Origin: Auanema rhodensis
Taxonomy: Eukaryota; Animalia; Nematoda
DNA length: 64,000 bases
Assembly: GCA_964057225.1 (NCBI GenBank)
Contig: OZ059895.1
Span: 16,492,001-16,556,000 of the forward strand
Direction: 5' to 3'
In this document: in pieces, positions 7,795-25,129 of the stretch
How positions within the stretch are numbered: the first letter of the stretch is position 1
How the letters are laid out: every line of letters starts with the position of its first letter
Notes under the pieces: model-generated
Seen by the model: only the letters and a program-made list of their open reading frames with translations
What the model was told of the DNA's origin: nothing
The model's database searches: none
Position numbers and translations under genes: made by a program

Positions 7795-9292
7795 CTACGT
7801 TGTATGAATATGCTCAAGGTGATTTTGGGAGATAGAATAGATTTTCGAACTATTCAAAATACTTTTTCGATGATTACTTGTTGCTGTTGCCATAGTTTTG
7901 GAAGCTAAATAGAATATTTTGTTATTTAATAAACTTAATTAACCAATTGATAGAAGCAGGTATGGTCTGTATTTCACAAATATTCTGATGATTCCCTGGC
8001 GAATTGATCGGTTCAGCAGAAGGTAGATATAAGGTGGCAGATCTAAAATGATCTAAGACTAGCAGATGAGAGTGAAAAATACTTGTAGATAGTTGATAAA
8101 GGATCCCAGCCATTTTTTCGTAAAGTTTTGGACATTTGAAGAAATATGTTGGAAGATAAAACAAACAGCCACCATTGCATAGACTAACCATGGCTAAGCA
8201 TTGAAAAAGGAGCTGAAAATAAGTTTTGTAATCTGGAAAACATAGAACACACACCGAAGCTTGACGCCGTCTATCTATCACGGATCCGAAGTTTTCTTGA
8301 AGGTTTTTAGATATGTTAAAGCATAGACAAATACTCAAAACACTATTCAATGAAACAATAGCAGTGTTATTGAATATCAGCATTGGGCTTAAATACTGAA
8401 TAAAGAAGATTATTGCGAATGTTCTTCCTAAACAAAACCAACCAGTGATGAAGAATTTTCGTAAATTAGTGGATCCAAAAACGTTAAACCATTCTTTGGA
8501 TGAAGAATTACAGCTGGTTCGAAAATGAAATAGTACAATCCACACGATACGATAGTGAGAATGGTAAGCACTGTATATTTGCTATTAAAGATATTAACCA
8601 AAATCTTATTTCTGAAGAGTTGCAATGAGAAAAGAAGTCAATATGAAGTTATACCTCGCAGAATTGATTTCAACTAATCTATTGATTATCAGAACAGTAG
8701 ATAGCAGTGTACCAGTTATCCAGGCACCTGAAAATAACCTTAATTGTTTCTCAACTCCAATGACCAAATCATTACTTGCTGCAACACAGCCAACTACATA
8801 AATGATGTTGGGAGAATCACAAAAATCTGCTCCAAAATAAGACATAATGCCTCAAGAGAATAAAAACTGTTGAGAGAAAACAAAAAATTCATACCGAAAA
8901 GAACAAAATTCAAGGCTGTACCACATAAATCACAAACAGCTATACCAATCATAATTTTATAAGCTGGGTATACAAAGTTCGAAGGTTCTAACATTACTTT
9001 CACACATAGTAAGTAAAGAATCTAAATAAAACTTGGCATTGATGCTCTAGGATTCGACTTACTAGATTGATAACACCGAAAATAAAACAGAAAATGCCAT
9101 ATACAGGAGCTGGTTCAATCACAACATTTGCAATGCTTTCAGGAGTTCGGGCACTTAAAACAGAAATGTAAATTCAACTAAAAACATCAATGTTAATTCA
9201 AAATAAAGAAAATGAAAAGGAAAACATAAAGACTACCTGCAGTTGTACAGAGGATCATTGATGATATTTCCATATCTGATTAGACGCTCCAT
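7795..9292 (-). CDS. Srt-family serpentine chemoreceptor, copy 2
   Basis: ATG at 9292 (MERLIRYGNIINDPLYNCSARTPE). Same exon structure and Srt motifs as copy 1. Last exon follows a 39-nt intron and ends in TAG at 7795. Confidence 0.9.
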
Positions 9293-9789
9293 GCCAGATA
9301 TACTGTTGATGTAGTTCAGATTTTAAAAATTTCAAAAGAAATCACTTTATAACTCATCTAAGAAAAAGTTCGTTTTGCTTTCTTCGTCAAATTAAGCGTA
9401 TTGAACATGTGTTCTGCAGAGTGCACTTCATTAAGAATGAAAGCTTCAGATCCTTTTCAAAGAACATAGAATATACGTTTCCATTATTATCAGATAATGA
9501 GAAATTTTTATTATTTACAATTAGCTACTATTTGCAAACACGAGGAAAATGTTAGCAGAAGCATCCGTTTTGAACTTTAATTGAAGTAAGTAATTGCAAA
9601 AGCGATTTATCGAAGTTGGAATTCATAAGTGTAAGTATTTTGATATTCGTAAGCAGATTTCACGTCACGTAGTTCACTTCACTAGTAACGGATGAAATAT
9701 GCTAATTACCAAAAAAATGAATTACTATTCAAATCAACACTCCGTTGCTGACTATGATACAATTCATAATCAAAATTAAGATTTGAATA

Positions 9790-10100
9790 GCATTTGAGAA
9801 AACTGCCACAGAATGTTCATGCAAGAACCAGAATTAATGTCAGATAAGTTGATGTAAAGACACTCATAATGAAGCTTGATAAATTCATTGAAACGGAAGA
9901 CGTAAAAGCAGAAATAAACTACATAAATCTAATAACGGGTATAACAATTATAATTGCAAACGCAAGTTGTCAAGTTCTAAAATTACAAGGGATCTTCTAA
10001 AGCAGTAGATAATTGTAATATCTCATACAACGGGAACATCAGATGAGTGAAGTAAGATTACGATTAAAAATGTAAAGTACGTTATGCCCCGAATAAATTA
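9790..10100 (+). mobile_element. Possible decayed BEL/Pao-type LTR retrotransposon gag fragment
   Basis: Stop-interrupted frame HLRKLPQNVHARTRINVR*VDVKTLIMKLDKFIETEDVKAE resembles, from memory only, the KLP...L..FI..EE segment of BEL/Pao Gag. No LTR seen. Confidence 0.2.
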
Positions 10101-10788
10101 TATTTTTTTTCCAAATGCTTGAAACTTTTCTGGACATTTCTTTTGGAATAACTAATTTAATACAATGAGTGTTTCGCAATTGCAAAGTGGATAATTAGCA
10201 AATATCATACATAACTATGTTTTTAATTTTTTTTTTGTTTTTAAAAAATATTTATATTTCATTAGCTTAATGTTTAATGGAGATGTTCCATATTATATAT
10301 TGCTTATTATTATATTGTATAGTTATTTAATTATTTATCATGGTTTAATTGATTTCTTACCAATGTTCAAGCAGATTCTATTATTTTTAAACACGATGAT
10401 AACGTTATTGGTATACAAATCTTGCCTCATCCATATTTATATTTAATCTACCTATGTCGTAATATTATATAAATAACTTTATAGCAGAAACATATTTACA
10501 AGAATAACCGGAATAATTTTGCTCATTTCTTTAAATTATTACAAAATTTTTACTTCACCTGTAATACTACTGGAATAACAAAGTATGAGCCCCTCACATT
10601 GTATTTTTTCACTTGTTCTACTTTTTTATAGCATTAACCTAAGAATAATTTTGAACTGAACTTATTATTTTTCCGAAATTCTAAATAATCAACGTCATAC
10701 AACGAGTACATCATTATATAGCTTACAAGTGGTTACAATTGAATATGATATCTATTTAAGGTTGTTCTTGAGATGCAATAGTAGGCTT

Positions 10789-12256
10789 TCAAGCGATTGT
10801 AGCGATTTTCGAACCATTGAAAACACTTTTTGGATGATTACTTGTTGCTGTTGCCATAGTTTTTGAATCTAAATAGAATATTTTGTTATTTGATAAACTT
10901 AATTAACCAATTGATAGAAGCAGGTATGGTCGGTATTTCACAAACATTCTTATGATTCCCTGGCGAATTGATCGGTTCAGCAGAAGGTAGATATAAGGTG
11001 GCAGATCTAGAAGAAATGCTTAAATAGAGAAAAAAAAGAGCTTATACTTGTACATAGTAGATAAAGGATCCCAGCCATTTTTTCGTAAAGTTTTGGACAT
11101 TTGAAAAAGAAAGTTGGAAGATAAAACAAACAGCCAGCATTGCATAGACTAACCATGGCTAAGCATTGAAAAAGGAGCTGAAAATAAGTTTTGTAATCTG
11201 GAAAACTTAGAACACACACCGAAGCTTGACGCCGTCTATCTATCACGGATCCGAAGTTTTCTTGAAGGTTTTTAGATATGTTAAAGCATAGACAAATACT
11301 CAAAACACTATTCAATGAAACAATAGCAGTGTTATTGAATATCAGCATTGGGCTTAAATACTGAATAAAGAAGATTATTGCGAATGTTCTTCCTAAACAA
11401 AACCAACCAGTGATGAAGAATTTTCGTAAATTAGTGGATCCATAATAGCTAAACCATTTTTAACATCAGGTATTTCAGATGGTTCGAAAATGAAATAGTA
11501 CAATCCACACGATACGATAGTGAGAATGGTAAGCACTGTATATTTGCTATTAAAGATATTAACCAAAATCTTATTTCTGAAGAGTTGCAATGAGAAAAGA
11601 AGTCAATATGAAGTTATACCTCGCAGAGTTGATTTCAACTAATCTATTGATTATCAGAACAGTAGATAGCAGTGTACCAGTTATCCAAACACCTAAAAGT
11701 AACCTTAATTGTTTCTCAACTCCGATGACCAAATCATTACTTGTTCCGATGGCTCCAGCCACATAAATAACGTTCGGAGAATCACAGAAATGTGCTCCAA
11801 AATAATACATAATGCCTTAAGGAAGTAAAAGCTGTTAAGAAGGAAAAAAACTCTTCACCGAATAAGATGCCAGTATAAGCTGCACCATATATATCACAAA
11901 CAGCTATACCAATCATAATTTTATAAGCTGGGTATACAAAGTTGGAAGGTTCTAACATTACTTTCACACATAGTAAGTAAAGAATCTAAATAAAACTTGG
12001 CATTGATGCTTTAGGATTCGACTTACTGGATTGATAACACCCAAAATAAAACAGAAAATGCCATATACAGGAGCTGGTTCAATCACAACATTTGCAATGC
12101 TTTCAGGAGTTCGGGCACTTAAAACAGAAATGTAAATTCAACTAAAAACATCAATGTTAATTCAAAATAAAGAAAATGAAAAGGAAAACATAAAGACTAC
12201 CTGCAGTTGTACAGAGGATCATTGATGATATTTCCATATCTGATTAGACGCTCCAT
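10789..12256 (-). CDS. Srt-family serpentine chemoreceptor, copy 3 (recent duplicate of copy 2)
   Basis: ATG at 12256, TGA at 10789. Near-identical to copy 2 including most introns and ~150 nt of upstream sequence. Confidence 0.9.
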
Positions 12257-12950
12257 GCCAGATATACTGTTGATGTAGTTCAGATTTTAAAATTTTCACA
12301 AGAAATCACTTTATAACTCTTCTAAGAAAAAGTTGGTTTTGCTTTCTTTGTCAAATTATGCGTTTTGAGCATGTGCTGTGCAGAGTGCACTTCATTAAGA
12401 AAAAGATCTTGAGATACTCTTCAACAAAAATAAAATATACTAACCTTTTTGATACTAAAAATCATTAAGTACTAGAAGGTATTAAAAAATCAAAATTTTG
12501 ATTAAGCAGATAGTTCTATAACCAATTATTTGGTTCATTTAGGCTTCTGTCAGAAAAAATAAATTGGGAACAATATAGGCTGACTTCATGTTTTTATCAG
12601 TTCTTATTGAACAACACTTCTAGAACCAAGAAGAAGTGTAGGCACATGAACGTTAACACACGCCCGAAATTGTATTTACTAGTGAAAAGTGATAAAGGCA
12701 AAATGCCACAACTATTTTCAAGTATAGAAAGAATGTTAATAAGGTAAGAACAAAGCAACGATTTGCGGATCACACGCATAAGACATAATATTATTTTATA
12801 TCGTAGATGATGAATTTTACCATTTGATATGACTAGCACATTCAAAAAGTAGCAAATAAAATAAGTCATAATATTCTTCACTGTTATCCAGTATTATTTT
12901 CGGCCAAAGAGTTTTTCTGTGAAAATTATTTTAGAAAGAAGGCAAACCAC

Positions 12951-14447
12951 TTAGTTTCGAGATTCAGGTATAATGGTACTGTTAAATATGCTTGTTTTGC
13001 GTGTGGATGACATTTCGTTTCTTTGTTTTCGTTTATCTAATGTAGATGAAGTTGTCATAGCAGCTAAATACAAATTTGAATTGATGAACTTTCTCAATTT
13101 ACTAACTCGTTGATACGGACAATTTGAGTGGATATGTAGCAAACATTTTAAGAATTCCATGTCGTATAGATCTATTGAGGATCAGGTATATATAAGGTGG
13201 AAGACCTGAATAAATTAAAAGTTAAAAAGATTAAAACAATATATACTTGTAGCTAGTTGATAAAATACTCCAGCAAGTTTTTGGAAAGTGATAGGAAATT
13301 CAAAGAAGCCATTCGATAGATATGTCACACCAGCAATGTTGCACAGACTAACCATAATTAAGCATTGAAAATAAAGCTGTACCAAAGATGTTATTGGTAA
13401 AAGATATGCAGATATTACCGCAGCTTGTCGTCGTCGATTGATGACAGAGCCAAAGTTTTCCCTCATATGTTTAGATAAATTGAAACAGAGTAGAACGCTC
13501 AAAAAGCTATTGAATGAAACAATAATAGAGTCATTGAAGATAGATAATGAACTGTAGTACTGGAATAACTTGAATCAATTACCTTTGATAAGAGAAAGAC
13601 CTACTTGAGATGAAGCATTTTCATAAATTTGTGGATCCCAATATGCTAATCCATCTTTTGGGTTAATCAAAAAAGATGGTTCGTGAACGAAATAGTATAT
13701 TCCGATCAATGCAGGTATGCAAATAACAATAGATGTATATTTTCCATTAAAAGTATTTATCAAAAACTTATTCCTGAAAACATTGCTTAGAAAAAAGAAA
13801 TAGAAAATGAGGATCACTGTGTGGCCTTTATGTCAACTAAACGGTTAATGGTTAAAATAGTAGACATCTGTGAGCCTGATAACCAAGCACCTGTAAAACA
13901 AAGTAAAACACAGTACGAACTTCTTAACCTTGAGAGATGTAATATCAAAAACGTTTCTTATATATATCTACCTCCTCCAATGGATCCCGCGATGTATATA
14001 ATATTAGGAGATTCACAGAATGATAGTCCGTAGTAGTATATAGAGCCTTAAAAAAATTCAAAATAATGAAATTTAGCATAAAACCTCTACCGAACACAAT
14101 ACTATTCACAGCAACTCCAATCATATCACAAATAGATAAGGCAACCATAATCTTATATGCCGGATATGAAAAGTTGGCTGGTTCTAACATGACTTTCACG
14201 CAAAGTATGAACAAAATCTTCGAGATTAAAATAGAAAAGTTTCAAGAAGATTCAACTTACTTCGTGTAGTACACCGAGAGTGATACAAGCGCTGCCGTAG
14301 GCATGTGAAGGTTCAGCCAAAGAGTTTTCAATTAGTTCCGGGGTACGAGCACTTAAAAATACTTTATTGAGATATAGACATGATCACAAACCTGCAGTTA
14401 TAAAGAGGATCATTTACAATATTTCCATAACGAAGTATACGATCCAT
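12951..14447 (-). CDS. Srt-family serpentine chemoreceptor, copy 4
   Basis: ATG at 14447 (MDRILRYGNIVNDPLYNCS), TAA at 12951. Srt motifs present. 5' and 3' blocks are near-identical to copy 1. Confidence 0.9.
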
Positions 14448-14697
14448 TATCAAAGTTGTTACTTTCAAGCTTCACAAGAATGTTGATATAAACCATTGCA
14501 GAATTTTATATCACTTAAGAATCTAAAATTCACTTTTTCGACGATACAAATAATCCATAAGTGTAAACATTATAATTAAGTACATTACATCAATGTTATC
14601 GAAAACATTTGCAGACATAGCCACATTGATATTCTATTCAACAGATCAGCTGTATTAGTTATTGAGAAAAGAGTTTTCTAACGTAAACCAAATTGTA

Positions 14698-15044
14698 TAC
14701 GTGAAATATGGGTTGACGTGAACGGTATATGTCCTAATTATGTAAATTTATATTTTAGTTAATCTATTTTTATCATTGGAGCGCGCTACACTTATATTTT
14801 ATTTTGCAAAAGAGTTCTCATGGCAAATCACCAGGAAATGCTAATAGAAACAGTTATACTGCTGTTTCAATACTTTAAGTATATTGTTTTGAAAATCAAA
14901 GAAAAGATTTTAATTTACTTAGAATATGTATTAAAATTTTGAATACAAGTTATAATGTAAAAGTTCACTTTTAGTTGATTAATGACACCTTCACGTGTGA
15001 CTCACGTAAAAGTTCACGTAACTGATACATGACTGGTTCACGTG
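14698..15044. promoter_or_regulatory. CACGTG/TCACGT (E-box-like) cluster
   Basis: CACGTG at 14992 and 15039; TCACGT at 15002 and 15014; ACGTGAA at 14699 and 14716. Lies between the divergently oriented srt copy 4 and the GIY-YIG gene. Confidence 0.5.
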
Positions 15045-16069
15045 TGTATACTAGGTTAACAAGTAGAGTATCCAGCCTATTCCATTATAAACTGGTTAAA
15101 CTAATCTATGTACATTGTTATATTTAAATTTTATTTTGAACCGTTAGCAACATATTCAGAATTCAGAAGGAAATATCGGAAGATAGAGAATGTCCTGTTT
15201 CTTATTCTACATTTTTCAAGAATCTGCCAAGTATTCCATAGCTGATCTTTTCGAATAAATCGGATGTAACCTTAAGGGGCTTTGTCCAAGTTTAAACTTA
15301 TTCCTCAAAGGTTTTTCTATTGAGCATTATATAATATTATGAGGCGGAGATTGACGAGCCTAACAAAGCAGAATCCAGCCTTTTCCTTGCAAAGCTAAGT
15401 TTTAAATTTTCAAACGGAATAAGAGAAAAAATTATAGTTTCAAGAACAAAATCTGTATATAGAATTTAGTAGTAATAATATTTTTGTTAACTTATGTGTA
15501 TTGCACGTGAACCTCATTCAAGTATGTTGTCATTATATTAAATAGAAGCATGATTATGAATACGTTTGCATGCTCCAACGCTAAAAGTATGCTGTTCGGG
15601 GTGGCTATATAGGCTAATAGAAGTTTGAATCGTATTAAAATGCCTATTAATCCATATGTAATAATTAATTAATTGTTTAATTAAGCATTGTTTACTGATT
15701 TATATTTATTTATTTATTGAATCTTTGTTTTTGTATTTTTAGTCAAATAGACTCAATATACGGGGATGTCATGTGAAGATGAATCATCGAATATTGATTT
15801 TTCAAGAGAAAGATGAATCATCAGCAAGTTGTTGAATTAAATAGAAAATCTTTATAGCCCATGTAGCGTTATCAAAGAAAAGATAAACTGAGCATGACAA
15901 ATAGTATTTCGACCCATATGAGCTATCAATATTTGTCAGAGTATTGTTTCTCAATCAGTTAGTTAGTGGTTTGATAATTTGAGAATTTGATTACTTAAAT
16001 TGTCAACACTTTTCCTTTCGTATTTTCTTAATTTTCATGAATATAATTAAAAATATTTCATAGTTAACT

Positions 16070-17514
16070 ATGCGTTGCTATTGCAATAAAATTGCTGGTT
16101 CTTGTGTTTGTGAATCGACATATGTCGTTTATAAATTGAAATGTAGAGCATGTTTTCAATGCTATATCGGTAAGGTCAAAGTTAGGCTAATCACTTCACA
16201 TTCATGTATTCAGGAAAAACTAAACGTGCTTTCTGGATTCGCATAGCAGAACACATGAAAGGTCTTCTTCGATATAATGGAACTACACTTGCTAATCATA
16301 AGGTATAGTTAATATGATTACCTACCTATATGTTTATTCTTAATTTATTTTTGTTTATTCTCAATATTTCAGTGTCAACTAGGCTTTGAAATTCAAGTTT
16401 TAGCCCGTTCTCAACCGAATTCCAAAGCGTTAGGTATATTGGAAGAAAAAATGATGAACGTAGGTTGAACTTTTTAACATGTTATTGCAAATATTATATA
16501 CGGTAGTGGAATATACTGTACTTCGTAATATGCACGAGATTTGAACTTACATATACATTAGATTAGTTATTACTGGGTTACGGTATTTCACTGTTTTATG
16601 GATTACTGTATATCTACCCTTTGACCTTATTGGTCCTACCTCTTCCTATTAAATAAAAAAAGAAAGTGAAAGAAGTTTTGAATGATTAGTGCAATGATGT
16701 TGAAATAGAGATAATATTCGTGGCACTAAAGTGAAATAATTTGTATAATTACATGTTAAAAACAAAGAAATTAAATTTTTATATTTCTTTATCAATTTCA
16801 TATTAGAAAATTGATAAAGCTTACAAGAAGAAGCTTTTGTTCTAGGTTGGAAGATACCCCACCCCTCTATGACGTAAGTATAAGAGAAAAGAAAAGCATT
16901 CTTTAAAGATATTGAAAGATTATAATTATAATTTTTAATTTTCGAATAACGATAATAGAATGTCTAGCAAATTATATTCTTTATATAGTTAAATATATTA
17001 TAAAATAATGAAGACTTTATAGAAATATAAGCCAAGAATCAACATCAAAAACGAGAAAAAGGCTCAAGAAGAAGCAGCTCGATTGGGGATGGCTTTACGC
17101 GATGTAAGTAACTTCTACCAATATGATCAGCTTTTTTTTGCAAATTTAGAAAGGTCTTTGTAAACCTTTTGATAAACTCCGCGAAGCGAATGAAGATAAT
17201 GAAGATCAATTTGAATATTGGGTAAGTATTCTAAGAAGGATGAGTAGATAAATGATTTTATGTGTATTAGATTGGATCTCCTGATTTTGTATCATCACAA
17301 GTTGATCGTGAAGATGATGCTAGTTCTATAACAGAAGAAGAAGCTAGTAAGTTGCACTTTGAGGAATAGCATGATGAATGATCTGTTACAGGTAAATTCA
17401 CGGAAGGAGAACAATATTGTATTTTCAGTAGATATGACGTGAGTTTTGAAAAAAAATCTAAAATGTGATAGTTCTTTCATTTAGTTGCAAGCTCTAAGGT
17501 CTATTCTTGCTTAG
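16070..17514 (+). CDS. Stand-alone GIY-YIG endonuclease of the Penelope-like-element (PLE) type, 8 coding exons, 193 aa, with acidic C-terminal tail
   Basis: Exons 16070-16169, 16214-16302, 16373-16459, 17023-17103, 17150-17221, 17271-17346, 17392-17438, 17485-17514. All introns are GT-AG; total 582 nt, open frame. Product: MRCYCNKIAGSCVCESTYVVYKLKCRACFQCYIGKTKRAFWIRIAEHMKGLLRYNGTTLANHKCQLGFEIQVLARSQPNSKALGILEEKMMNKYKPRINIKNEKKAQEEAARLGMALRDKGLCKPFDKLREANEDNEDQFEYWIGSPDFVSSQVDREDDASSITEEEASKFTEGEQYCIFSRYDLQALRSILA. Motifs: VVY-x3-C-x2-C-x3-YIG-x-T-x-R, R-x2-EH, LE, P-x-IN. Confidence 0.88.
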
Positions 17515-17766
17515 TCATTTGACTCATGTAATTAAGCTAAAGCAACTAGAGTTATTTTCTCTGACGTAAGCAACTCATGTTGTGTTTTTGGGGAGAATCA
17601 AGGTTGATAATCGTTTATTTGTTACAACTTCATTTGAGATAATCAGTATGATGATCTAAGGCGAAAACGGAGTGCTCCAATGCGAATAACATCGAATGTG
17701 CAGTGTGATCAGTGTATTTAATGTTTTGTTTATACACATATAACATGACTTCGATACAGATAAATG

Positions 17767-17772
17767 AATAAA
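17767..17772 (+). terminator. Candidate polyadenylation signal of the GIY-YIG gene
   Basis: AATAAA ~250 nt after the stop codon, just before the stop of the convergent GPCR gene at 17819. Confidence 0.45.
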
Positions 17773-17818
17773 TAATTAAAGTTTAACCAAGAAATCTTTA
17801 GTCTATAATTAGAAATTA

Positions 17819-19880
17819 TTAGAGTGAGATAGTCAATCCTTGAGGCCTTTCCTTTTCCGAGGAAAACTGTCTTCTATCCATTAGGTTATTCTGTGGAGTT
17901 ATGTTACCAGTTTTTTCACGGCTTTTCCGTTTACAGAAGAAACGACGATTACTGAACAGTAGGAAACAAGGAATGATCATATCCGGCAGATAACAGAAGA
18001 CATTCCACCAGCTTATGGCAATGATAAGATCAACATTCTTTAAGTTGAGCACACCGATGATTTCAATGGATATTCCCAGCAGCTGAAAAGAATATAGCAT
18101 TTTGATGAGAAGAATCTTCTAACATACCAAATGAACTATTGTCAATACAACAGCTTGAAGTAAGATACCTTTCTTAACATTTGTCATCTTAGGTGATTTC
18201 GACAAATGCGTAACCAAATTCCGCTGTTTTCGTATTTTACAAAGAATCGGAGGATAAAAAATGATTGAAAGCAGAGTAATAAGTATTTGAAATCGTTGAT
18301 ATAACTGAAAAGCTTGTATCAATTTTGAATAACTTGGTAACTGTTGTAAAATCAGTCAAGTTACATGATGTTGTATATAGTCAGAAAGACCAAACACAAT
18401 ATTGCTTTTAAAAAAATTAAAACATCGAAAGTGATAATACCGAATAGTGAGATGTTTGAAGAACGACATCCATATATCCAAAACGTTTCATATAAAATCG
18501 AGAAATTTCGTAATAACGCCAAACAAATATTGATAAGCCAAGAGAAATAATGAAAGCAATTACTACATGAATAAGATATCGGTTACTGTAGTGAAGGGCA
18601 TATTTCTGTTTTTGTTTGAAAAAAAAATGAAAATTACCTGCTAAATAGCAAATCATCTAAACGTGAATTAGTAATTATTGTATATCGATTAGCTGATATA
18701 ATTAAAATCATAAAAAGTAAAAAATTGCTGAGAAAATGATTGGAAATGATTGCTATAACTCCTAGATATTCCGGTACAACATCACCAGTTGTAACAATTG
18801 ATGGGATTGATTTACATGATAGCAGTAATAACGAACGAATAGCTATAGTAAGTGAGCATACCAGAATCATTTTGAAGAATATACTCTGAAAGTATAATGT
18901 TTTAAATAGATTTATTTGTCGTTTGTACTATAAATTTATTTAAATTTAATATCTTATCGCAGTAAAAAACACCTATGACACCGTTACAGTAATCCATGAG
19001 CTACCGTAGGAATACGTAAACTCACACTACAGACGTTAACGTAAAAATACGTAGCCATGCGCAACCTAGGAATACGTATCCTTGCGCTACCGTAGTAATA
19101 CATAATTTTAAACTACGGTAGAAAAAATACCGTAGTGTGAGATGGAGAAAGAGTGCGAATTTTCTTTTTTATATGTTATAATGTAATAAGTATACACGAA
19201 GTTAATTGGATAATTAATAAACATTTAAATATATTTAAACAATATATTTAAATTTCGAAAACATATATATACGTAAATGTATAACAGGCTATTACTAACC
19301 ATGAATTTTTTTTCTAAATTTTCATAATGATATTATATAACTATATATTATAATATCATAAGAGTAGCACCTGACTATAGCATAAGATAGGAAAATTGAT
19401 TAAAAATATCAAAAAACATTATCGTAAAGTTGAAGATTTGAAGTATAGTTGCAGCTTACTAAAGTGATAAACACAACCGTTCAAGTAATATGATTTATAT
19501 AAATACATTACACGTGTTTTCACGTGAAAAAGTGCTGATTTATGCTAATTGGGTAAAAAAAAGCAATTTGAATATTTCAAGTATTAGTAAAGATTTGAAT
19601 TTGAAAAATGATACAAAACGAATAAATATACCTCGTCATATGATTTATATTTAATTATTATATATATTAAAATAATATTAAGTATTATAGATAAGATATA
19701 TACACCGATTGTGATATACAGTATTTCAATTAATACAATTTGTGTTGGAGGCGTAGGTAATGATGCAGGTGCATCAATGATTTCTGAACAAATATGTCGC
19801 CCAGCTATCAAAACTTGACATTCAACACTTGAAGCAGAAACTACGGTTTCTTCATATTGCACAGGACCACAAAATGTCAT
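17819..19880 (-). CDS. Serpentine 7TM receptor (Srx/Srv-like, Srg superfamily); 5' end uncertain
   Basis: Exons ~19890-19632 (Cys-containing N-terminus + TM1), 18885-18638, 18585-18441, 18304-18128 and 18082-17819 splice in frame. Seven hydrophobic segments, ISANRY after TM3, ILLQAV at TM6, LPDMIIPCFLLFSN at TM7. Further upstream exons near 19940-20125 are possible but unresolved. Confidence 0.8.
18985..19141. repeat. Small intronic repeat element with a ~26-nt internal unit and a 10-bp inverted repeat (MITE/Helitron-like remnant)
   Basis: Three degenerate copies of catgcgctaccgtaggaatacgta. CTCACACTAC (19021-19030) and GTAGTGTGAG (19132-19141) are inverted. A related 13-mer occurs inverted near 16600. 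Confidence 0.45.
19470..19526. promoter_or_regulatory. AACACAACCGTTCA 14-mer plus two CACGTG sites (intronic)
   Basis: 14-mer at 19470-19483; CACGTG at 19511 and 19521, 10 bp apart. Confidence 0.5.
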
Positions 19881-20604
19881 GTCTTTACAAGCTTAAATTG
19901 TTTAGCTCGAATGGACAAGCAGTATTGGGTCTGAACTTGAAGTAGCAATGGCTATAAAATTAGAAAAGAGGTATAACAAGCAATGAGTAGTCTAGTCAAG
20001 AAATTAATACAAGGGTTGTGAAGGCTTAGAGCCAGATACAGCATATTCGTGAAATGAGGCGGGAGGAACTAATACGTGCAGGCACATAGATAGCAATTCC
20101 AAATAAAGTTTATCGAAATCATTTTCTGAAAATGTTCTTCGATGTTGTTAATGAATATGATGATGATAACGACTTTGATTGAACTCAAAAATGGAGAATT
20201 TTCTTTAAAATGTTGCTACGAAATGAATGAAAGCAACTTATATTAAATTTTGAAATAACTAATAATATTTGATTTAAGACAGATAAATTTATTTTGTTTA
20301 TAAGCAAGTTACTCATAATACAACGATGATCATGTTAAAAATATGAATGGAGATTCATAGAATGGTTAAACTTAAGCTCTAAGCTGTAATACTTTCTCCT
20401 TACTTACGTCATCAAAGTGTTACTCTTTATATTTGAAATTTCTGATAGGAGATACTCAGAAATAAAAATTCACCATTCCTGTGAAATGTATTTGAGATAT
20501 TTCAATGTTAAACTTATATTTTTAAACTTCCGGGTATCTAATAATCACATAGTTATGAACACTGTTATGGAAAATTTAACAATAAAAAGGCATACAGAGA
20601 GTGA

Positions 20605-20608
<4 letters not shown>

Positions 20609-20672
<64 letters not shown>

Positions 20673-20673
20673 A
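20609..20673 (+). repeat. (GA)n microsatellite
   Basis: About 30 GA units read directly. Confidence 0.95.
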
Positions 20674-20994
20674 ATTTTGATTATTATCAGAATGTTGTTG
20701 TTGTTTATATCAACCATATACAAACATATGAATAACAACTAAAAACTTTAGAATAGAATATGATTGATTTGAAATTCCTTATTGGATTGAATACAAGCTT
20801 ATAACTCTATTGAATTCCTTCAGTTTACGATTGTCATTTGAAACAATCAGAAATATAATTTTGAATTGAGATCGAAGTTAAAAAAGACAAAAAACAGAAA
20901 TGTAAGCGATAACTTCCGTCTTTTAATATGCTGAAGTTGGCAAAAACTTGAGCATTTCTTCCAATATGCGATAAGTTTATGAAATAGAACTTAC

Positions 20995-21279
20995 GTTAGT
21001 ATATTGTTTTTGTGATAATTTAATAAAAAATATAATAATAATATTAGTTGATATAGTTGAAAAATGAATAATTGTTGATATATAATAAGTTAGCATAATA
21101 GTATCATCTATTGGATTTGTATTAATATTTGGGTTTGAGTTTGATGTTGAATAAGCGATCAGTGATTGAACACGACTATAGGGTACGGTATGAGTTACTG
21201 TATCCTGAGCATTTGAATCACTCACATACAATGTGATTGAGAATATTGAATCACTATCTTCATCAGTGATCATAGCCAT
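20995..21279 (-). CDS. Orphan or alternative first exon encoding an N-terminal segment plus one TM helix (TM1-like)
   Basis: 95 open codons, MAMITDEDSD...LTYYISTIIHFSTISTNIIIIFFIKLSQKQYTN, ending at a perfect phase-0 donor (AAC/gtaagt). No second 7TM body found downstream. Confidence 0.5.
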
Positions 21280-22523
21280 CGATGATCACTGATGGAGAAA
21301 CTTGGAGGACAAAGATCTTTTGAGAGAAAGAATGTGAAGAAAAGGCTTTTTTATCACATATGATGTGAATGTTACAGTATTTATGTGATATGTCGAAATA
21401 ACGATGAATTGAAGATTGTGGGGTGGTATATAGAAAGCTTGTTAGCTAAATGGGCGGAGAGGGTAATAAGGGGGGGAAGGAGGAAGGAGAGAGGAGGTAG
21501 GGTAAGAGGTAGTGATATACACTATATCGCAAGAGCATAATGATTAAATATATGAAAATCAATGTTTATAATAGTGATTGAAATCAAAACTTAGAGCAAA
21601 AACCAGAAATACTTTAATAACTATATCATATATTCAATATATTATATACGTTAATATTAAAAATAAATTAAAAGCTTTGAGATAAATCCATTTGATCTAA
21701 TGTTTTAATACTCAATAGATATGCTAACTAGCAATTATAAGATTGAAGAATCCAAAATACATTCATAGAATGAAAACATTGAATATGAAATTTGAGAATT
21801 TGTCGTTAAGCATGACGAGCGGGTGAAGGTTATCAGATAAGCTACACAGAGCTTAATGCTGAAAAGACGATTAGGAATACCATAAATAGTTATTTTCTAC
21901 TAACTTATACTAACTTCTATAAGATTTTTTTATATATTTTTTTATTTTTTAAAAAGAACTTTCGATATTATATGTGATAATATATATTTTTCGGTAAACC
22001 ATTAGGTCGTTATACTTAACTTAATTTCTTTTCTGCTATTGCAAGCCAATATTAATTGAATTTAACGAAAAAAAAGTAAAATATTTCTAAATTATATATA
22101 TATATATATAGTATATAGTATATATATATATATATATATATCAATTATATAGAGAATACTGACTATGAAATATAAACTATATAGTTATGTTAGAAGATAA
22201 TTTATAAACAAAATTATATGTTTATTGCTTATAATTATCGATAAAAAATTAATTTTGCGGTAGATAATATGCTAACTATATATGAAATATAAAAAAGAAA
22301 AAGCTGGAGACATATCTATAAACATATAATTAGAGATTGACTCACATATAGTTATGGTTTTGAAACAGTTTAGTCCACTTTCACAACTAATATTTGATAA
22401 CAAACTATATGAATCTTGTATCTCATTCGATGATATTCTTAATATAAATTGTATTTTGTTGAACTCTTCTATCAAATTTATGCAAAATATATAAATTAGC
22501 ATATTATATTATGCTTGTTAAGT

Positions 22524-22623
22524 CAAGTCACGTGAATCAACATCACGTGACTTGCACGTGAGTTTACAATTCAAGAATTCAGTTTTCATTTTCATTTCGG
22601 AATCACGTGTGAACGGTTGTGTT
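22524..22623. promoter_or_regulatory. Dense CACGTG cluster with a 12-bp inverted repeat and the 14-mer
   Basis: CACGTG at 22529, 22544, 22555 and 22604. Inverted repeat CAAGTCACGTGA-7 nt-TCACGTGACTTG. TGAACGGTTGTGTT (reverse complement of the 14-mer) at 22610-22623. Confidence 0.55.
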
Positions 22624-25129
22624 AGCATTATCTAGTCAGGATCGAGTGTGAGTTGTAATTCAGAATATGACATGCCTGTATAGTTAAGTTTAAGTATATT
22701 ATAGTTAAGTATACTAATATATGATTTATACTATATTGATATTGATATACCAATGCTTAGTGACCTGAATGATAGTACAGAAATCGTGAAATTCTGATGC
22801 ACATATGTGATTGAGCTGTTGCTATTGCTTTATTGATAATCAAAATAAATAAGAGATGTGTGTAAGTGTATGTTTAGCATGTAAGCTGTTGAGATAGATT
22901 ACTTTGAGGCGTTGTATTAGACAACATATGTTTGTAATCATGCCATTCTGAAGAACAACTGTGTAAATTCAGATTATTGACATCAACAAAATCAACTTCT
23001 GAAGCATACACACAAACAGCAAATACCAGATAATTCGTGAACGCTACATCAACATCACGGACGACAAAATTTGAATTGCATCATTTGAATGAAAATGACA
23101 AAAAAGCTTTGAATATCTAATCCATACCAAATCTACATATATCTATCTAGTACTGTACCATATTCAGCACTGTTTCAAAGAAAAAAAAAGAAAAGATTGA
23201 AGTATGAGAAATGAAGATTTCTTGTTAATCTGCCTTTCATACCAAGTACAACAAGTGAAATTACAAATATTTTAATATTTAAAAAAAAAAAAGAAAGATA
23301 AATCTTCATTCATTTTCTTTTGTCTTTTACCATAACATCAATAAGTTGTTTTTATTATCTCAAAGTCTAACAGGCTTCTTCTCTTCATCTTCATCATCAT
23401 CCTCATCATCCACTCATCCACGAACACACACACACACACATACTCACACGCATCATGTTGCCATTTGTTTTCTTTTTATGATTGTTTCTTCTTCTTCATT
23501 TCTTTTTTTTCAATTCAAATTCCATTCATTCCACAGCTTAATGACAATTCAATTTTCAAATTTATTTTTTTAATTTTTATGTTTTGTCATCCACCCCATT
23601 TCCCTCTTGATATCAATCTCTCTCTCTCTCTTCCCCTCTCTCTCTCTCTCTCTCTCAACTCCCTCCTCTCTTCTCTCTCTCTCTCTCTCTCTCTCTCGCA
23701 CAAAAAAATATTTTTATTCTAAGCTCTTTGAACTTTAAATGTGTGCTCATTTTTCTCATCATTACATTGATATGTCAATTGAATTTCATGTGCCATTCTA
23801 CATACCAGAATCTAAATCCCAGGTATTTCACATCAGACACACACATGCACATGCACATTGAGCTTCAAACAGAAACAAGCTTTCCATTTTGCTCATTTTT
23901 TCATTCAATATTGTTTCTTCCTCTCTCCTACTTATGCTCCCCCCTTCTCCATCCTTCTCTCTCTTTCACCCTCTATACTACTTCTTCTCCTTCATCTTCT
24001 TCTTCAAATGTGTTTCCGATTTGAGCAGTTATTGAAATCGTACACATCGTTCTTGAGAATTTTTCCTTTATTCACACAAACATACAAACTTTTGCAACTT
24101 ATCCATCTTGTCTTAAACAACGTTTTTCTTTTTTTTTTTTAAAAACCCTAGATTCAAATAAGAATCTACGTACATATGTATGTATATATAAGCAATTTTC
24201 ACAAAAAAAAGCCAAACTTAACATCGGAAAACAAAGCCAATTTGACTATTATTGTTCAAACGTTTTCGACTTTTAGTGAGATTTTCCATTTCTATTACGT
24301 CTGTAAAAGCTTTGTAAACACATTGAAATGAGAATAATGAAGGAAATGGACTATAACATCATCATGATGAAGCTTTATGCTTAATGATAAGATTTGGAAT
24401 TAGATTCTGGCCTTCAGATTTCTACAGAAGATCTTTTGAACTCGAAAGCTCAGTGATAACTGAGTCCAACTGATAATGTGATCTTATACTAGATTTCTTA
24501 ATTTATTTCTATTTCGATACATCATTCATCAGTACTATTTCTCGAAGATAATCAGAAAATGACTCTGTATTCGTATCAAAATCTATGCTTCTCACGTAGT
24601 ATGTTGTATAGTATTTGCAATTGAAATGCCCTGAGGGAACTTCATCATCATCGTTATTCGTTTTCTCTTTTCCCTTGTATGTTTCAATCGTTCTCATAGT
24701 CTTATACAAAGCACAGAGAGTTAGCGGTGATGATGACGACAACGACGATGATGGAGCCACTTCCATTACGCCATTTGCTCTTGATCCTTCTTTTTTCTTC
24801 TGTTTCAGCAAGCCTTACATTTCGTTTCTTCAATTCTTTGAAATAATCTCTTAGAAAATTCATTATTCTCTCTATCTCTTTTAACTCCTTTTCCTCATTC
24901 TTCTCTCCTTTTTTGCTTTTATCTTTCCTCTTCTTTCTGTTGTTGACGAGTGAACAATACGACTTTTACGATGTGGTAATGACCCGAAGGAAAGTCTGGC
25001 GGCAAAGCCACGATGAGCCAAGAACTTTGTTCTTTTATACTTTTATATCATTCTCTTCCTACTTTTGCTCCTGCTCCTTTCCACCCCCTCAATCCCTTGC
25101 ATTGCCTCCCCTTCCCTGCAACTCCCCCT

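What the first reader, a model, noticed from the sequence alone, without database searches (positions are those of the whole stretch)
16070..17514. Hidden intron-rich gene encoding a stand-alone Penelope-type GIY-YIG endonuclease (candidate domesticated retroelement nuclease)
Seen: eight tiny exons (30-100 nt), all missed by the ORF track, join through seven GT-AG introns into one uninterrupted 193-aa frame. It carries VVY-x3-C-x2-C-x3-YIG, R-x2-EH, a second His (LANH), LE and P-x-IN. One intron splits the Gly codon of YIG itself. Known: two Cys between the GIY and YIG motifs plus two downstream His (CCHH) typify PLE endonucleases, and the Tyr/Arg/Glu/Asn residues form the GIY-YIG active site. 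In PLEs this domain is normally fused to a reverse transcriptase. Here no RT or pseudo-LTR is visible in the window, and the domain has a CxC-x6-CxC N-terminus and a ~90-aa charged/acidic tail spread over the last five exons. It lacks the layout I would expect of SLX1 (C-terminal RING) or LEM-3/ANKLE1 (ankyrin/LEM). Inference: a catalytically intact, host-domesticated nuclease, or a new endonuclease-only element. Caveat: some PLEs are known to retain introns.
Basis: partly seen in the sequence, partly recalled or inferred. Interest (0 to 1): 0.92.

Follow-up and report, generated by a model that had tools for sequence, protein, structure and literature searches.

The report
Stand-alone Penelope-type nuclease gene in nematode
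A nematode carries one expressed, eight-exon gene for a small DNA-cutting enzyme of the kind normally built into Penelope-like retrotransposons, here without the rest of the transposon, so it may be the first such nuclease taken over by a host.

Summary

The first 100 residues are a GIY-YIG nuclease core of the Penelope-like-element (PLE) type.
- A profile built from 113 PLE endonuclease fragments scores it 51.3 bits; the best of 2000 shuffles scores 8.0.
- An independent I-TevI-family profile scores it 17.0 bits against 10.1 for shuffles.
- All catalytic and Cys/His positions are present.

It is not a transposon copy.
- It is single-copy in the 181-Mb genome.
- The window has no PLE reverse transcriptase, no flanking repeats and no hammerhead ribozyme.
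- No PLE was found elsewhere in the genome.

The genome is a nematode's: it holds about 3450 SL1 copies.

Domestication is plausible but not shown. I found no orthologue and could run no selection test. The branch in the endonuclease tree is very long.

The spliced protein has no reference, so I could not send it to Pfam, the large protein databases or structure prediction. I found no paper describing a host gene derived from a PLE endonuclease. The scan had not reported this on other DNA.

The parts
15691..16069 (+). Unspliced 5' leader of the transcript. The start is extrapolated to about 15691-15748. It contains short upstream ORFs. Possible SL1 acceptors lie at 15742/15743 and at 16063/16064 (tttcatag|TTAACT before the ATG).
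   Evidence: Contig lengths and offsets. Sequence. SL1 is present in the genome. Trans-splicing was not observed.
16070..16169 (+). Exon 1: Met1 to Ile33 plus the first base of Gly34. It holds the Cys cluster CxC-x6-CxC (16076-16111), the GIY-equivalent VVY (16124-16132), and C25, C28, C31 and Y32.
16170..16213 (+). Intron 1 (44 nt, phase 1, GT..AG). It splits the Gly codon of YIG.
16214..16302 (+). Exon 2: rest of Gly34 to Lys63. It holds T36, R38, R43, E46, H47 and the second His, H62.
16303..16372 (+). Intron 2 (70 nt, phase 0).
16373..16459 (+). Exon 3: Cys64 to Asn92. It holds the catalytic Glu (E86, in ILEE).
16460..17022 (+). Intron 3 (563 nt, phase 0). It holds an inverted repeat at 16471-16497 / 16736-16762. 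It also holds a 120-nt piece (16858-16977) that is 85% identical to C3:15861578-15861698, probably a repeat insertion.
17023..17103 (+). Exon 4: Lys93 to Asp119. It holds P95-R-I-N98 (the catalytic-site Asn), the end of the nuclease core near 17046, and the start of the charged tail.
17150..17221 (+). Exon 5 (tail, residues 120-143). Intron 4 is 17104-17149.
17271..17346 (+). Exon 6 (acidic tail, residues 144-168). Intron 5 is 17222-17270.
17392..17438 (+). Exon 7 (tail, residues 169-184). Intron 6 is 17347-17391, phase 1.
17485..17514 (+). Coding part of exon 8 (residues 185-193 and the TAG stop). Intron 7 is 17439-17484.
17515..17760 (+). 3' UTR. The end is extrapolated to about 17703-17760 from contig lengths.
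   Evidence: The 3' exon is held by at least 6 RNA-like runs of study P1.

Best explanation
This is a single-copy, transcribed and correctly spliced nematode gene. It encodes a 193-aa stand-alone nuclease. Residues 1-100 are a Zn-stabilised GIY-YIG catalytic domain homologous to the endonuclease of Penelope-like retroelements. Residues 101-193 are a lineage-specific charged, acidic tail. The most likely history is this (inferred): the endonuclease module of an ancient PLE, either a canonical C-terminal EN or the N-terminal EN of a Naiad-type element, lost its reverse transcriptase. It stayed in the genome as a host gene, gained seven spliceosomal introns and acquired a new C-terminus. The most likely activity (inferred from the family, not tested): it nicks or cuts DNA by the usual one-metal GIY-YIG mechanism. 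Y21 and Y32 would position and activate the nucleophile. R43 and H47 would stabilise the transition state. E86 would hold Mg2+. N98 would brace the active site. C25, C28, H47 or H62, and perhaps C31 and C64, would bind structural zinc. The N-terminal four-Cys cluster would help DNA recognition. The acidic tail would bind a partner or mask the DNA-binding surface. Shown here: the gene model, expression, single copy, homology to PLE endonucleases, intact motifs, and the absence of RT, pLTR and hammerhead. Inferred: derivation from a PLE, catalytic activity, and a host function.
For: Four contigs skip all seven GT..AG introns with no mismatches. The frame is 193 aa with coding-type GC periodicity. 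A profile of 113 PLE EN domains scores 51.3 bits over residues 18-107. The best of 2000 full shuffles scores 8.0. Shuffles that keep the selected motif average 23.2 (sd 2.65, max 37.9). Members of that family carry PF01541 and PF26215. L086 has PLE RT sequence upstream of its EN. An independent profile of 107 I-TevI-family proteins aligns GIY, YIG, R, H and E in register and scores 17.0 bits, against 10.1 for the best of 2000 shuffles. In the tree the protein joins the RT-linked L086 family with 95/98 support. The own-genome searches found only one copy. The strict PLE motif pattern gave one chance hit in the genome. Seventeen long PLE ORFs hit only EN exons 1-2 in the window. No hammerhead appears at E<=1 in 9000-25000. 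No flanking repeats were found. The criteria for a PLE endonuclease are taken from PMC8557442.
Against: No orthologue or paralogue was found, so nothing here shows purifying selection. The terminal branch is 2.39 against a median of 0.31; that could mean relaxed constraint, and it makes the tree position unsure. The comparison set was ascertained with the motif, or with a profile that included this protein's exons, which inflates similarity. The motif-masked score is only 12.7 bits. The 5' leader of about 330-380 nt carries upstream ORFs, which could limit translation unless the mRNA is trans-spliced. All RNA evidence comes from one study, from assembled contigs. Pfam, the database searches and a fold of the whole spliced protein could not be run. 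No protein or activity data exist.
Confidence: 0.6

Rival explanations
1. It is a transcribed relic. The gene would be the leftover endonuclease of a dead PLE, for example the N-terminal EN of a Naiad-type element cut off from its RT. It still has an open frame and is spliced, but it has no host function and is drifting.
For: The terminal branch in the EN tree is very long. No orthologue was found. Naiads occur in nematodes, carry the EN at the N-terminus, lack hammerheads, and lose the EN-RT link through frameshifts in an A-rich KR block (PMC8557442). Exon 4 after the EN core is A-rich and Lys-rich. A decayed PLE copy that is transcribed and carries an intron is documented in a rotifer (PMC3846280).
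Against: All 193 codons are open across eight exons (chance 2.7e-6). Third-position GC is depleted, as in coding sequence. Every catalytic and Zn-ligand position is intact, although the rest of the domain is only 31-37% identical to the nearest PLE ENs. All seven splice sites are used. No RT remnant lies downstream or anywhere else in the 64-kb window. No other PLE trace was found in the genome. A relic that old would be expected to be broken.
Confidence: 0.25
2. It is an old free-standing GIY-YIG gene that never belonged to a retroelement. It would be a relative of whatever nuclease the PLEs themselves captured.
For: PMC8557442 discusses the possibility that PLEs acquired ENs carrying Zn-finger motifs from free-standing nucleases, and notes stand-alone ENs with both motifs next to Terminons. 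This protein's N-terminal CxC-x6-CxC cluster does not match the CX2-5CxxC linker of Neptune, Nematis and Naiad. The branch is long.
Against: In the tree the protein sits inside the PLE EN set, next to an RT-linked family, and not between the PLEs and the I-TevI outgroup. It shares family-specific details with that clade: a third Cys just before YIG, a His-Cys pair after EH, and KPRIN-K-E-K at the domain end. The same paper states that homing ENs with these Zn motifs have not been found.
Confidence: 0.1
3. It is a real host protein that no longer cuts DNA. The GIY-YIG and Zn module would be kept only as a DNA- or protein-binding domain.
For: Some positions that are invariant in the nearest PLE family differ here: T162, A165 and L166 of alignment A5 correspond to I, E and K in this protein. 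The second His is shifted by two positions.
Against: Y21, Y32, R43, H47, E86 and N98 are all present with family-typical spacing. Inactive GIY-YIG relatives usually lose some of these residues.
Confidence: 0.05

Closest known systems
GIY-YIG endonuclease domain of Penelope-like retroelements (NCBI cd10442). The nearest sampled set is an RT-linked family represented by L086 and P0149-P0268.
   Same: Same catalytic core and spacing. Two Cys lie between GIY and YIG, with His ligands after them (CCHH). A third Cys precedes YIG. The motifs T-x-R-x4-R-x2-EH, E-x8-P-x-I-N and K-x-E-x-K at the domain end are shared. Profile score 51.3 bits; identity 31-37% over about 95 aa.
   Different: It is not fused to a reverse transcriptase. 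It is single-copy, has no pLTR or hammerhead, and is interrupted by seven introns. It starts at its own Met with a CxC-x6-CxC cluster. It carries a roughly 93-aa acidic tail that the PLE ORFs lack; they end about 10 aa after the domain.
Naiad-type PLEs (N-terminal EN, reported in nematodes among other phyla; PMC8557442)
   Same: The EN lies at the very N-terminus of the ORF, preceded only by a Cys-rich Zn-finger-like motif. There is no hammerhead. The EN is known to detach from the RT.
   Different: The Naiad linker is CX2-5CxxC, not CxC-x6-CxC. No KR block, CxC motif or RT follows here. I could obtain no Naiad sequences, so similarity was not measured.
I-TevI-type homing endonuclease catalytic domain (PF01541)
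   Same: It aligns over the whole roughly 85-aa catalytic domain, with GIY, YIG, Arg, His and Glu in register.
   Different: I-TevI has no Cys/His zinc site inside the core. It has a C-terminal DNA-binding domain. It is encoded in a phage intron.
SLX1 and LEM-3/ANKLE1, the known eukaryotic host GIY-YIG nucleases
   Same: They are host-encoded GIY-YIG nucleases acting on chromosomal DNA.
   Different: SLX1 is a separate gene in this genome (C3:8526096) and belongs to a different GIY-YIG subfamily. I saw no RING, ankyrin or LEM motif in the 193 aa. The locus that another reader called LEM-3-like (L133) shows no similarity.

Membership tests
GIY-YIG nuclease superfamily (PF01541) | GIY-type and YIG-type motifs 10-11 residues apart | tested here: met
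   V19-V-Y21 and Y32-I-G34; the Tyr-to-Tyr distance is 11. They align to GIY and YVG of the I-TevI family.
GIY-YIG nuclease superfamily (PF01541) | Conserved Arg and His after YIG, with Glu and Asn further on | tested here: met
   R43, H47, E86 and N98 align to the family positions in two independent profiles.
GIY-YIG nuclease superfamily (PF01541) | Significant match to a family profile | tested here: inconclusive
   Pfam itself could only be run on single exons, and it found nothing. The spliced protein has no reference and was not typed in. A home-made profile of 107 proteins that all carry PF01541 scores 17.0 bits, above all 2000 shuffles (max 10.1). A Seg-type profile did not separate it from shuffles.
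GIY-YIG nuclease superfamily (PF01541) | Alpha/beta GIY-YIG fold | not tested
   Structure prediction takes only referenced sequences, and a spliced product has none.
PLE endonuclease domain (cd10442) | Two Cys directly between GIY and YIG, plus two His (CCHH) | tested here: met
   C25, C28, H47 and H62 are present. PMC8557442 says the position of the second His varies. An extra C31 and C64 are shared with the L086 family.
PLE endonuclease domain (cd10442) | Closer to RT-linked PLE ENs than to other GIY-YIG nucleases | tested here: met
   51.3 bits to the PLE EN profile against 17.0 bits to the I-TevI profile. It joins the RT-linked family at 95/98 support, though on a long branch. In 28 of the 80 motif-selected loci a PLE RT lies upstream of the EN on the same strand.
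PLE endonuclease domain (cd10442) | Upstream CX2-5CxxC linker (Neptune, Nematis and Naiad only) | tested here: not met
   The upstream cluster is C3-x-C5-x6-C12-x-C14. Penelope/Poseidon ENs lack the linker, and Hydra ENs have CxCX5C (PMC8557442).
Penelope-like retroelement (the mobile element) | PLE reverse transcriptase in the same ORF or unit | tested here: not met
   tblastn of 17 long PLE ORFs against the 64-kb window hits only EN exons 1-2, and nothing else below E 0.3. The ORFs of 90 aa or more between 7.9 and 28.4 kb have no Pfam family.
Penelope-like retroelement (the mobile element) | Pseudo-LTRs, or tandem or inverted partial copies | tested here: not met
   No direct or inverted repeat flanks the gene in 13000-21000.
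Penelope-like retroelement (the mobile element) | Hammerhead ribozyme in the terminal repeats (canonical PLEs; absent in Naiads) | tested here: not met
   No Rfam hammerhead at E<=1 in 9000-25000.
Penelope-like retroelement (the mobile element) | Several dispersed copies | tested here: not met
   The DNA, exon 1 and exon 2 each find only this locus. The strict motif pattern gives one chance hit. A PLE RT+EN protein and a PLE EN profile find nothing in the genome. These searches work exon by exon and are lower bounds.
Domesticated (exapted) transposon gene | Syntenic orthologues under purifying selection | not testable with these tools
   No eukaryotic genome collection was available. Protein searches found no orthologue, but they could use only exon 1 or a mixed profile.
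Domesticated (exapted) transposon gene | Single copy, intact frame, expressed, and stripped of the transposition machinery | tested here: met
SLX1 | SLX1-type GIY-YIG domain with a C-terminal RING/PHD finger | tested here: not met
   The only PF01541 hit in the genome is a different locus with the typical SLX1 sequence. I saw no RING pattern in the tail here.

The most novel reading that the evidence does not exclude
This would be the first endonuclease of a Penelope-like retroelement to be domesticated by an animal host. It would be kept because the nematode uses it to make programmed DNA breaks, for example in programmed DNA elimination, in germline genome defence against transposons, or in a repair or resolution pathway. 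The acidic tail would tie it to a host partner.
Probability: 0.1. Interest if true: 0.9.

Novelty: new variant of a known kind. Interest (0 to 1): 0.62.

Why it matters
Hosts have repeatedly recruited transposon nucleases and transposases; RAG1 and PiggyMac are established examples (from general knowledge). In four full-text searches I found no paper describing a host gene derived from a PLE endonuclease. The one study I read that looked for this, in a bdelloid rotifer, found none (PMC3846280).

If this gene is conserved and active, it would add the PLE GIY-YIG nuclease to the list of domesticated transposon enzymes. It would also be a small (22 kDa), naturally free-standing version of an enzyme that has mostly been studied as part of a large RT fusion.

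It bears on an open question raised in PMC8557442: where did PLE endonucleases with their Zn motifs come from, and do free-standing forms exist?

If it turns out to be a drifting relic, it is still a useful case. It would show how long an orphaned transposon domain can remain expressed and spliced.

Tried and rejected
**Left out on purpose**
I therefore did not run Pfam, NCBIfam or PDB searches on the whole protein, did not run the search for homologous proteins, the listing of cluster members or the look-up of encoding contigs on it, and did not predict or search its structure.

**Tried without result**
- Pfam on single exons: nothing relevant.
- PDB sequence search with exons 1 and 2: nothing.
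- Exhaustive representative search with the 33-aa exon 1: only a spurious Cys-rich repeat protein.
- ESM Atlas with exon 1: scores below 0.9 to eukaryotic clusters carrying PF01541 or HTH_animal. This is a lead only.
- PF26215 is not in the local Pfam copy.
- MAFFT alignments of the exon pieces onto a scaffold protein (A1, A2) scattered the pieces. A3 and A4 were only partly correct. A4 was used as a mixed profile, so its hit list is biased towards the L086 family.
- A T4 SegA-type profile did not separate the protein from shuffles; that subfamily is too divergent.
- One T4 region I fetched did not contain I-TevI.
- The contig holding P0248 gave no clue to the host taxon of the nearest PLE family.

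**Considered and rejected**
- A chance ORF chain: rejected by the RNA contigs and the open-frame statistics.
- SLX1: it lies elsewhere in the genome.
- Kinship with the GIY-YIG locus noted by another reader (s1-422584): no similarity.
- An active PLE or an 'endonuclease-only element': single copy and no terminal structures.

Full report
**1. The observation**

The region 16070-17514 holds no long ORF.

I searched public runs with window:15900-17700 and found four runs of one study, labelled organism A, that held about 35% of the sampled words. That is roughly the exonic share. I laid their contigs on the stretch. Each run has one contig of 1093-1207 nt with no mismatches. Each contig skips exactly seven segments, and every skipped segment has GT..AG ends on the + strand.

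Intron 1 is phase 1 and splits the Gly codon of YIG.

The contigs run unspliced from about 15691-15748 to about 17703-17760. This gives a 5' leader of 330-380 nt containing short upstream ORFs. An in-frame TAG at 16061-16063 fixes the start at the ATG at 16070.

The 3' exon is held by at least six RNA-like runs of the same study. It is also held by DNA runs of three other studies.

Statistics argue against chance:
- CDS GC is 0.359 against 0.265 for the introns.
- GC by codon position is 0.469/0.376/0.232.
- The chance that 193 codons stay open in this composition is 2.7e-6.

**2. The organism**

The canonical nematode SL1 22-mer occurs about 3450 times in the 181-Mb assembly, in tandem arrays with periods of 252 and 341 bp. 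The genome is therefore a nematode's, and trans-splicing is available. Acceptor-like sites lie at 15742/15743 and at 16063/16064, the latter six bases before the ATG. Contigs cannot show whether either site is used.

**3. What the protein is**

The spliced protein has no reference, so I could not send it to the database tools. Single exons are too short for them. I worked locally instead, using sequences fetched by reference.

(a) *An independent GIY-YIG profile.* I-TevI from the T4 record gave 107 relatives, nearly all carrying PF01541. Their profile matches residues 19-100 at 17.0 bits, with GIY, YIG, Arg, His and Glu in register. The best of 2000 shuffles scores 10.1. A Seg-type profile was uninformative.

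(b) *PLE endonuclease loci.* I back-translated the published PLE signature C-x2-C-x3-Y-[IV]-G-x-T-x-R-x4-R-x2-E-H into a DNA pattern and scanned the metagenome contigs. At least 120 loci matched, and 80 were fetched. In 28 of them a PLE reverse transcriptase lies upstream on the same strand, sometimes with the inverted partial copy typical of PLEs. The pattern therefore does pick out PLE endonucleases.

(c) *The nearest family.* The best match to the nematode protein is L086, at 40 bits, and it is RT-linked. A mixed profile of L086 and my exon pieces retrieved 120 related fragments. Many are annotated with PF01541 and PF26215. None is an orthologue: the best scores 39.8 bits, with 31-37% identity over about 95 aa.

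(d) *A profile of that family.* A profile of 113 of these domains, built without my sequence, scores the nematode protein at 51.3 bits over residues 18-107. The controls were:
- Full shuffles reach 8.0 at most.
- Shuffles that keep the 23 motif residues average 23.2 (sd 2.65, max 37.9).
- With the motif masked, 12.7 bits remain.

So the similarity is real and extends beyond the motif I selected on, although the motif carries much of it.

(e) *Shared family details.* These include a third Cys right before YIG, a His-Cys pair after EH, and the domain end KPRIN-K-E-K.

(f) *Tree.* In a maximum-likelihood tree with I-TevI as outgroup, the protein joins the L086 family with 95/98 support. Its branch is 2.39 against a median of 0.31, so the placement is unsure.

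Against the criteria in PMC8557442, the CCHH feature and the R, H, E and N residues are met. The CX2-5CxxC linker is not; here the upstream cluster is CxC-x6-CxC.

**4. What it is not**

It is not a transposon copy.
- The DNA, exon 1 and exon 2 find only this locus in the genome.
- The only other DNA hit is a 120-nt repeat piece inside intron 3.
- The strict motif pattern gives one genome hit. That hit lies opposite what looks like a Ski/Dachshund-type exon and is followed by a stop, so it is a chance match.
- A PLE RT+EN protein and a PLE EN profile find nothing in the genome. These searches work exon by exon and are lower bounds.
- Seventeen long PLE ORFs hit only EN exons 1-2 in the 64-kb window.
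- There are no flanking direct or inverted repeats and no hammerhead ribozyme.
- The ten ORFs of 90 aa or more between 7.9 and 28.4 kb that I scanned have no Pfam family.

It is not SLX1, which lies at C3:8526096. It is also unrelated to the GIY-YIG locus noted by another reader.

**5. How it most likely works**

*Shown:* an expressed, spliced, single-copy gene for a PLE-type GIY-YIG domain with every catalytic and zinc-ligand position intact, followed by an acidic tail of about 93 aa (pI 4.46).

*Inferred from the family:* Mg2+-dependent nicking or cleavage of DNA. PMC3846280 reports that the Penelope EN domain cuts DNA in vitro.

*Inferred from context:* the module was orphaned from a PLE long ago and kept by the host. 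The arguments are these:
- The frame and all key residues survive, although the domain is only about a third identical to its nearest relatives.
- No other PLE trace was found in the genome.
- The gene has seven introns.
- It has a new C-terminus.

I put 0.6 on 'functional host nuclease of PLE origin'.

**6. Rivals**

- *A transcribed relic (0.25).* Naiad-type PLEs occur in nematodes, carry the EN at the N-terminus behind a Cys motif, lack hammerheads, and lose the EN-RT link through frameshifts in an A-rich KR block. That fits an ORF that begins with a Cys cluster and the EN, and is followed by an A-rich, Lys-rich stretch. I could obtain no Naiad sequences to test this.
- *A free-standing nuclease that never belonged to a PLE (0.1).* The tree speaks against this, but only weakly.
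- *A non-catalytic role (0.05).* This is unlikely given the intact residues.

**7. Novelty**

Four full-text searches found no report of a host gene derived from a PLE endonuclease. PMC3846280 looked for exapted PLE ORFs in a rotifer and found none.

I rate this a new variant of a known kind: a known enzyme family in a new genomic role and architecture. Domestication remains unproven.

**8. Limits**

- RNA support comes from one study and from assembled contigs only.
- There are no orthologue data and no selection test.
- There is no Pfam hit and no fold for the whole protein.
- The comparison sets are ascertained through the motif or through a profile that included this protein's exons.

Noticed in passing
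G000:C3:6741531-6766485 and C3:14134320 onward (loci L008, L009): The nematode SL1 spliced-leader 22-mer occurs about 3450 times in the assembly (2592 forward, 859 reverse). It sits in long tandem arrays with periods of about 252 bp and 341 bp. I recall roughly a hundred SL1 genes in C. elegans, so this count looks very high.
   Followed up: no
window 16471-16497 / 16736-16762 and 16858-16977 (inside intron 3): Intron 3 holds a 27-nt inverted repeat pair 238 nt apart, which looks MITE-like. It also holds a 120-nt piece 85% identical to C3:15861578-15861698. These probably explain why intron 3 is 563 nt while the other six are 44-70 nt.
   Followed up: partly
window 20580-20687 and 20684-20755: An (AG)n microsatellite of about 100 nt. 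Directly beside it is a sub-threshold Rfam match to mir-392 (31 bits against a gathering score of 62, E 0.011). The match is probably a low-complexity artefact.
   Followed up: no
window 17819-18100 (- strand): A 93-aa open frame rich in hydrophobic residues ends about 60 nt from the extrapolated 3' end of the nuclease transcript. It looks like the last exon of a convergent membrane-protein gene. It has no Pfam hit.
   Followed up: partly
L006 (G000:C6:4156097-4159131), around 1380-1540, - strand: The only genome hit to the strict PLE motif pattern lies opposite an exon whose translation resembles a Ski/Dachshund-type domain (by eye, not tested), so the motif match is a chance one.
   Followed up: partly
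L003 (G000:C3:8524596-8527733): This is the genome's SLX1-type GIY-YIG gene, split by short introns. It is the only PF01541 hit in the own-genome search.
   Followed up: partly
window 17485-17700 in runs X13 and X14: DNA runs filed under two other organism labels (B and C) hold the 3' exon with all sampled words. They may be very close relatives, or the same nematode sequenced under another label.
   Followed up: no
L014 (metagenome contig, ORF 556-2661): A 702-aa ORF has a CxC-x8-C-x5-C cluster directly before a CC-type GIY-YIG motif. Its flanks did not match any of the five PLE RT probes. It may be a different kind of element or gene carrying a PLE-like endonuclease in the middle of a long protein.
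   Followed up: no
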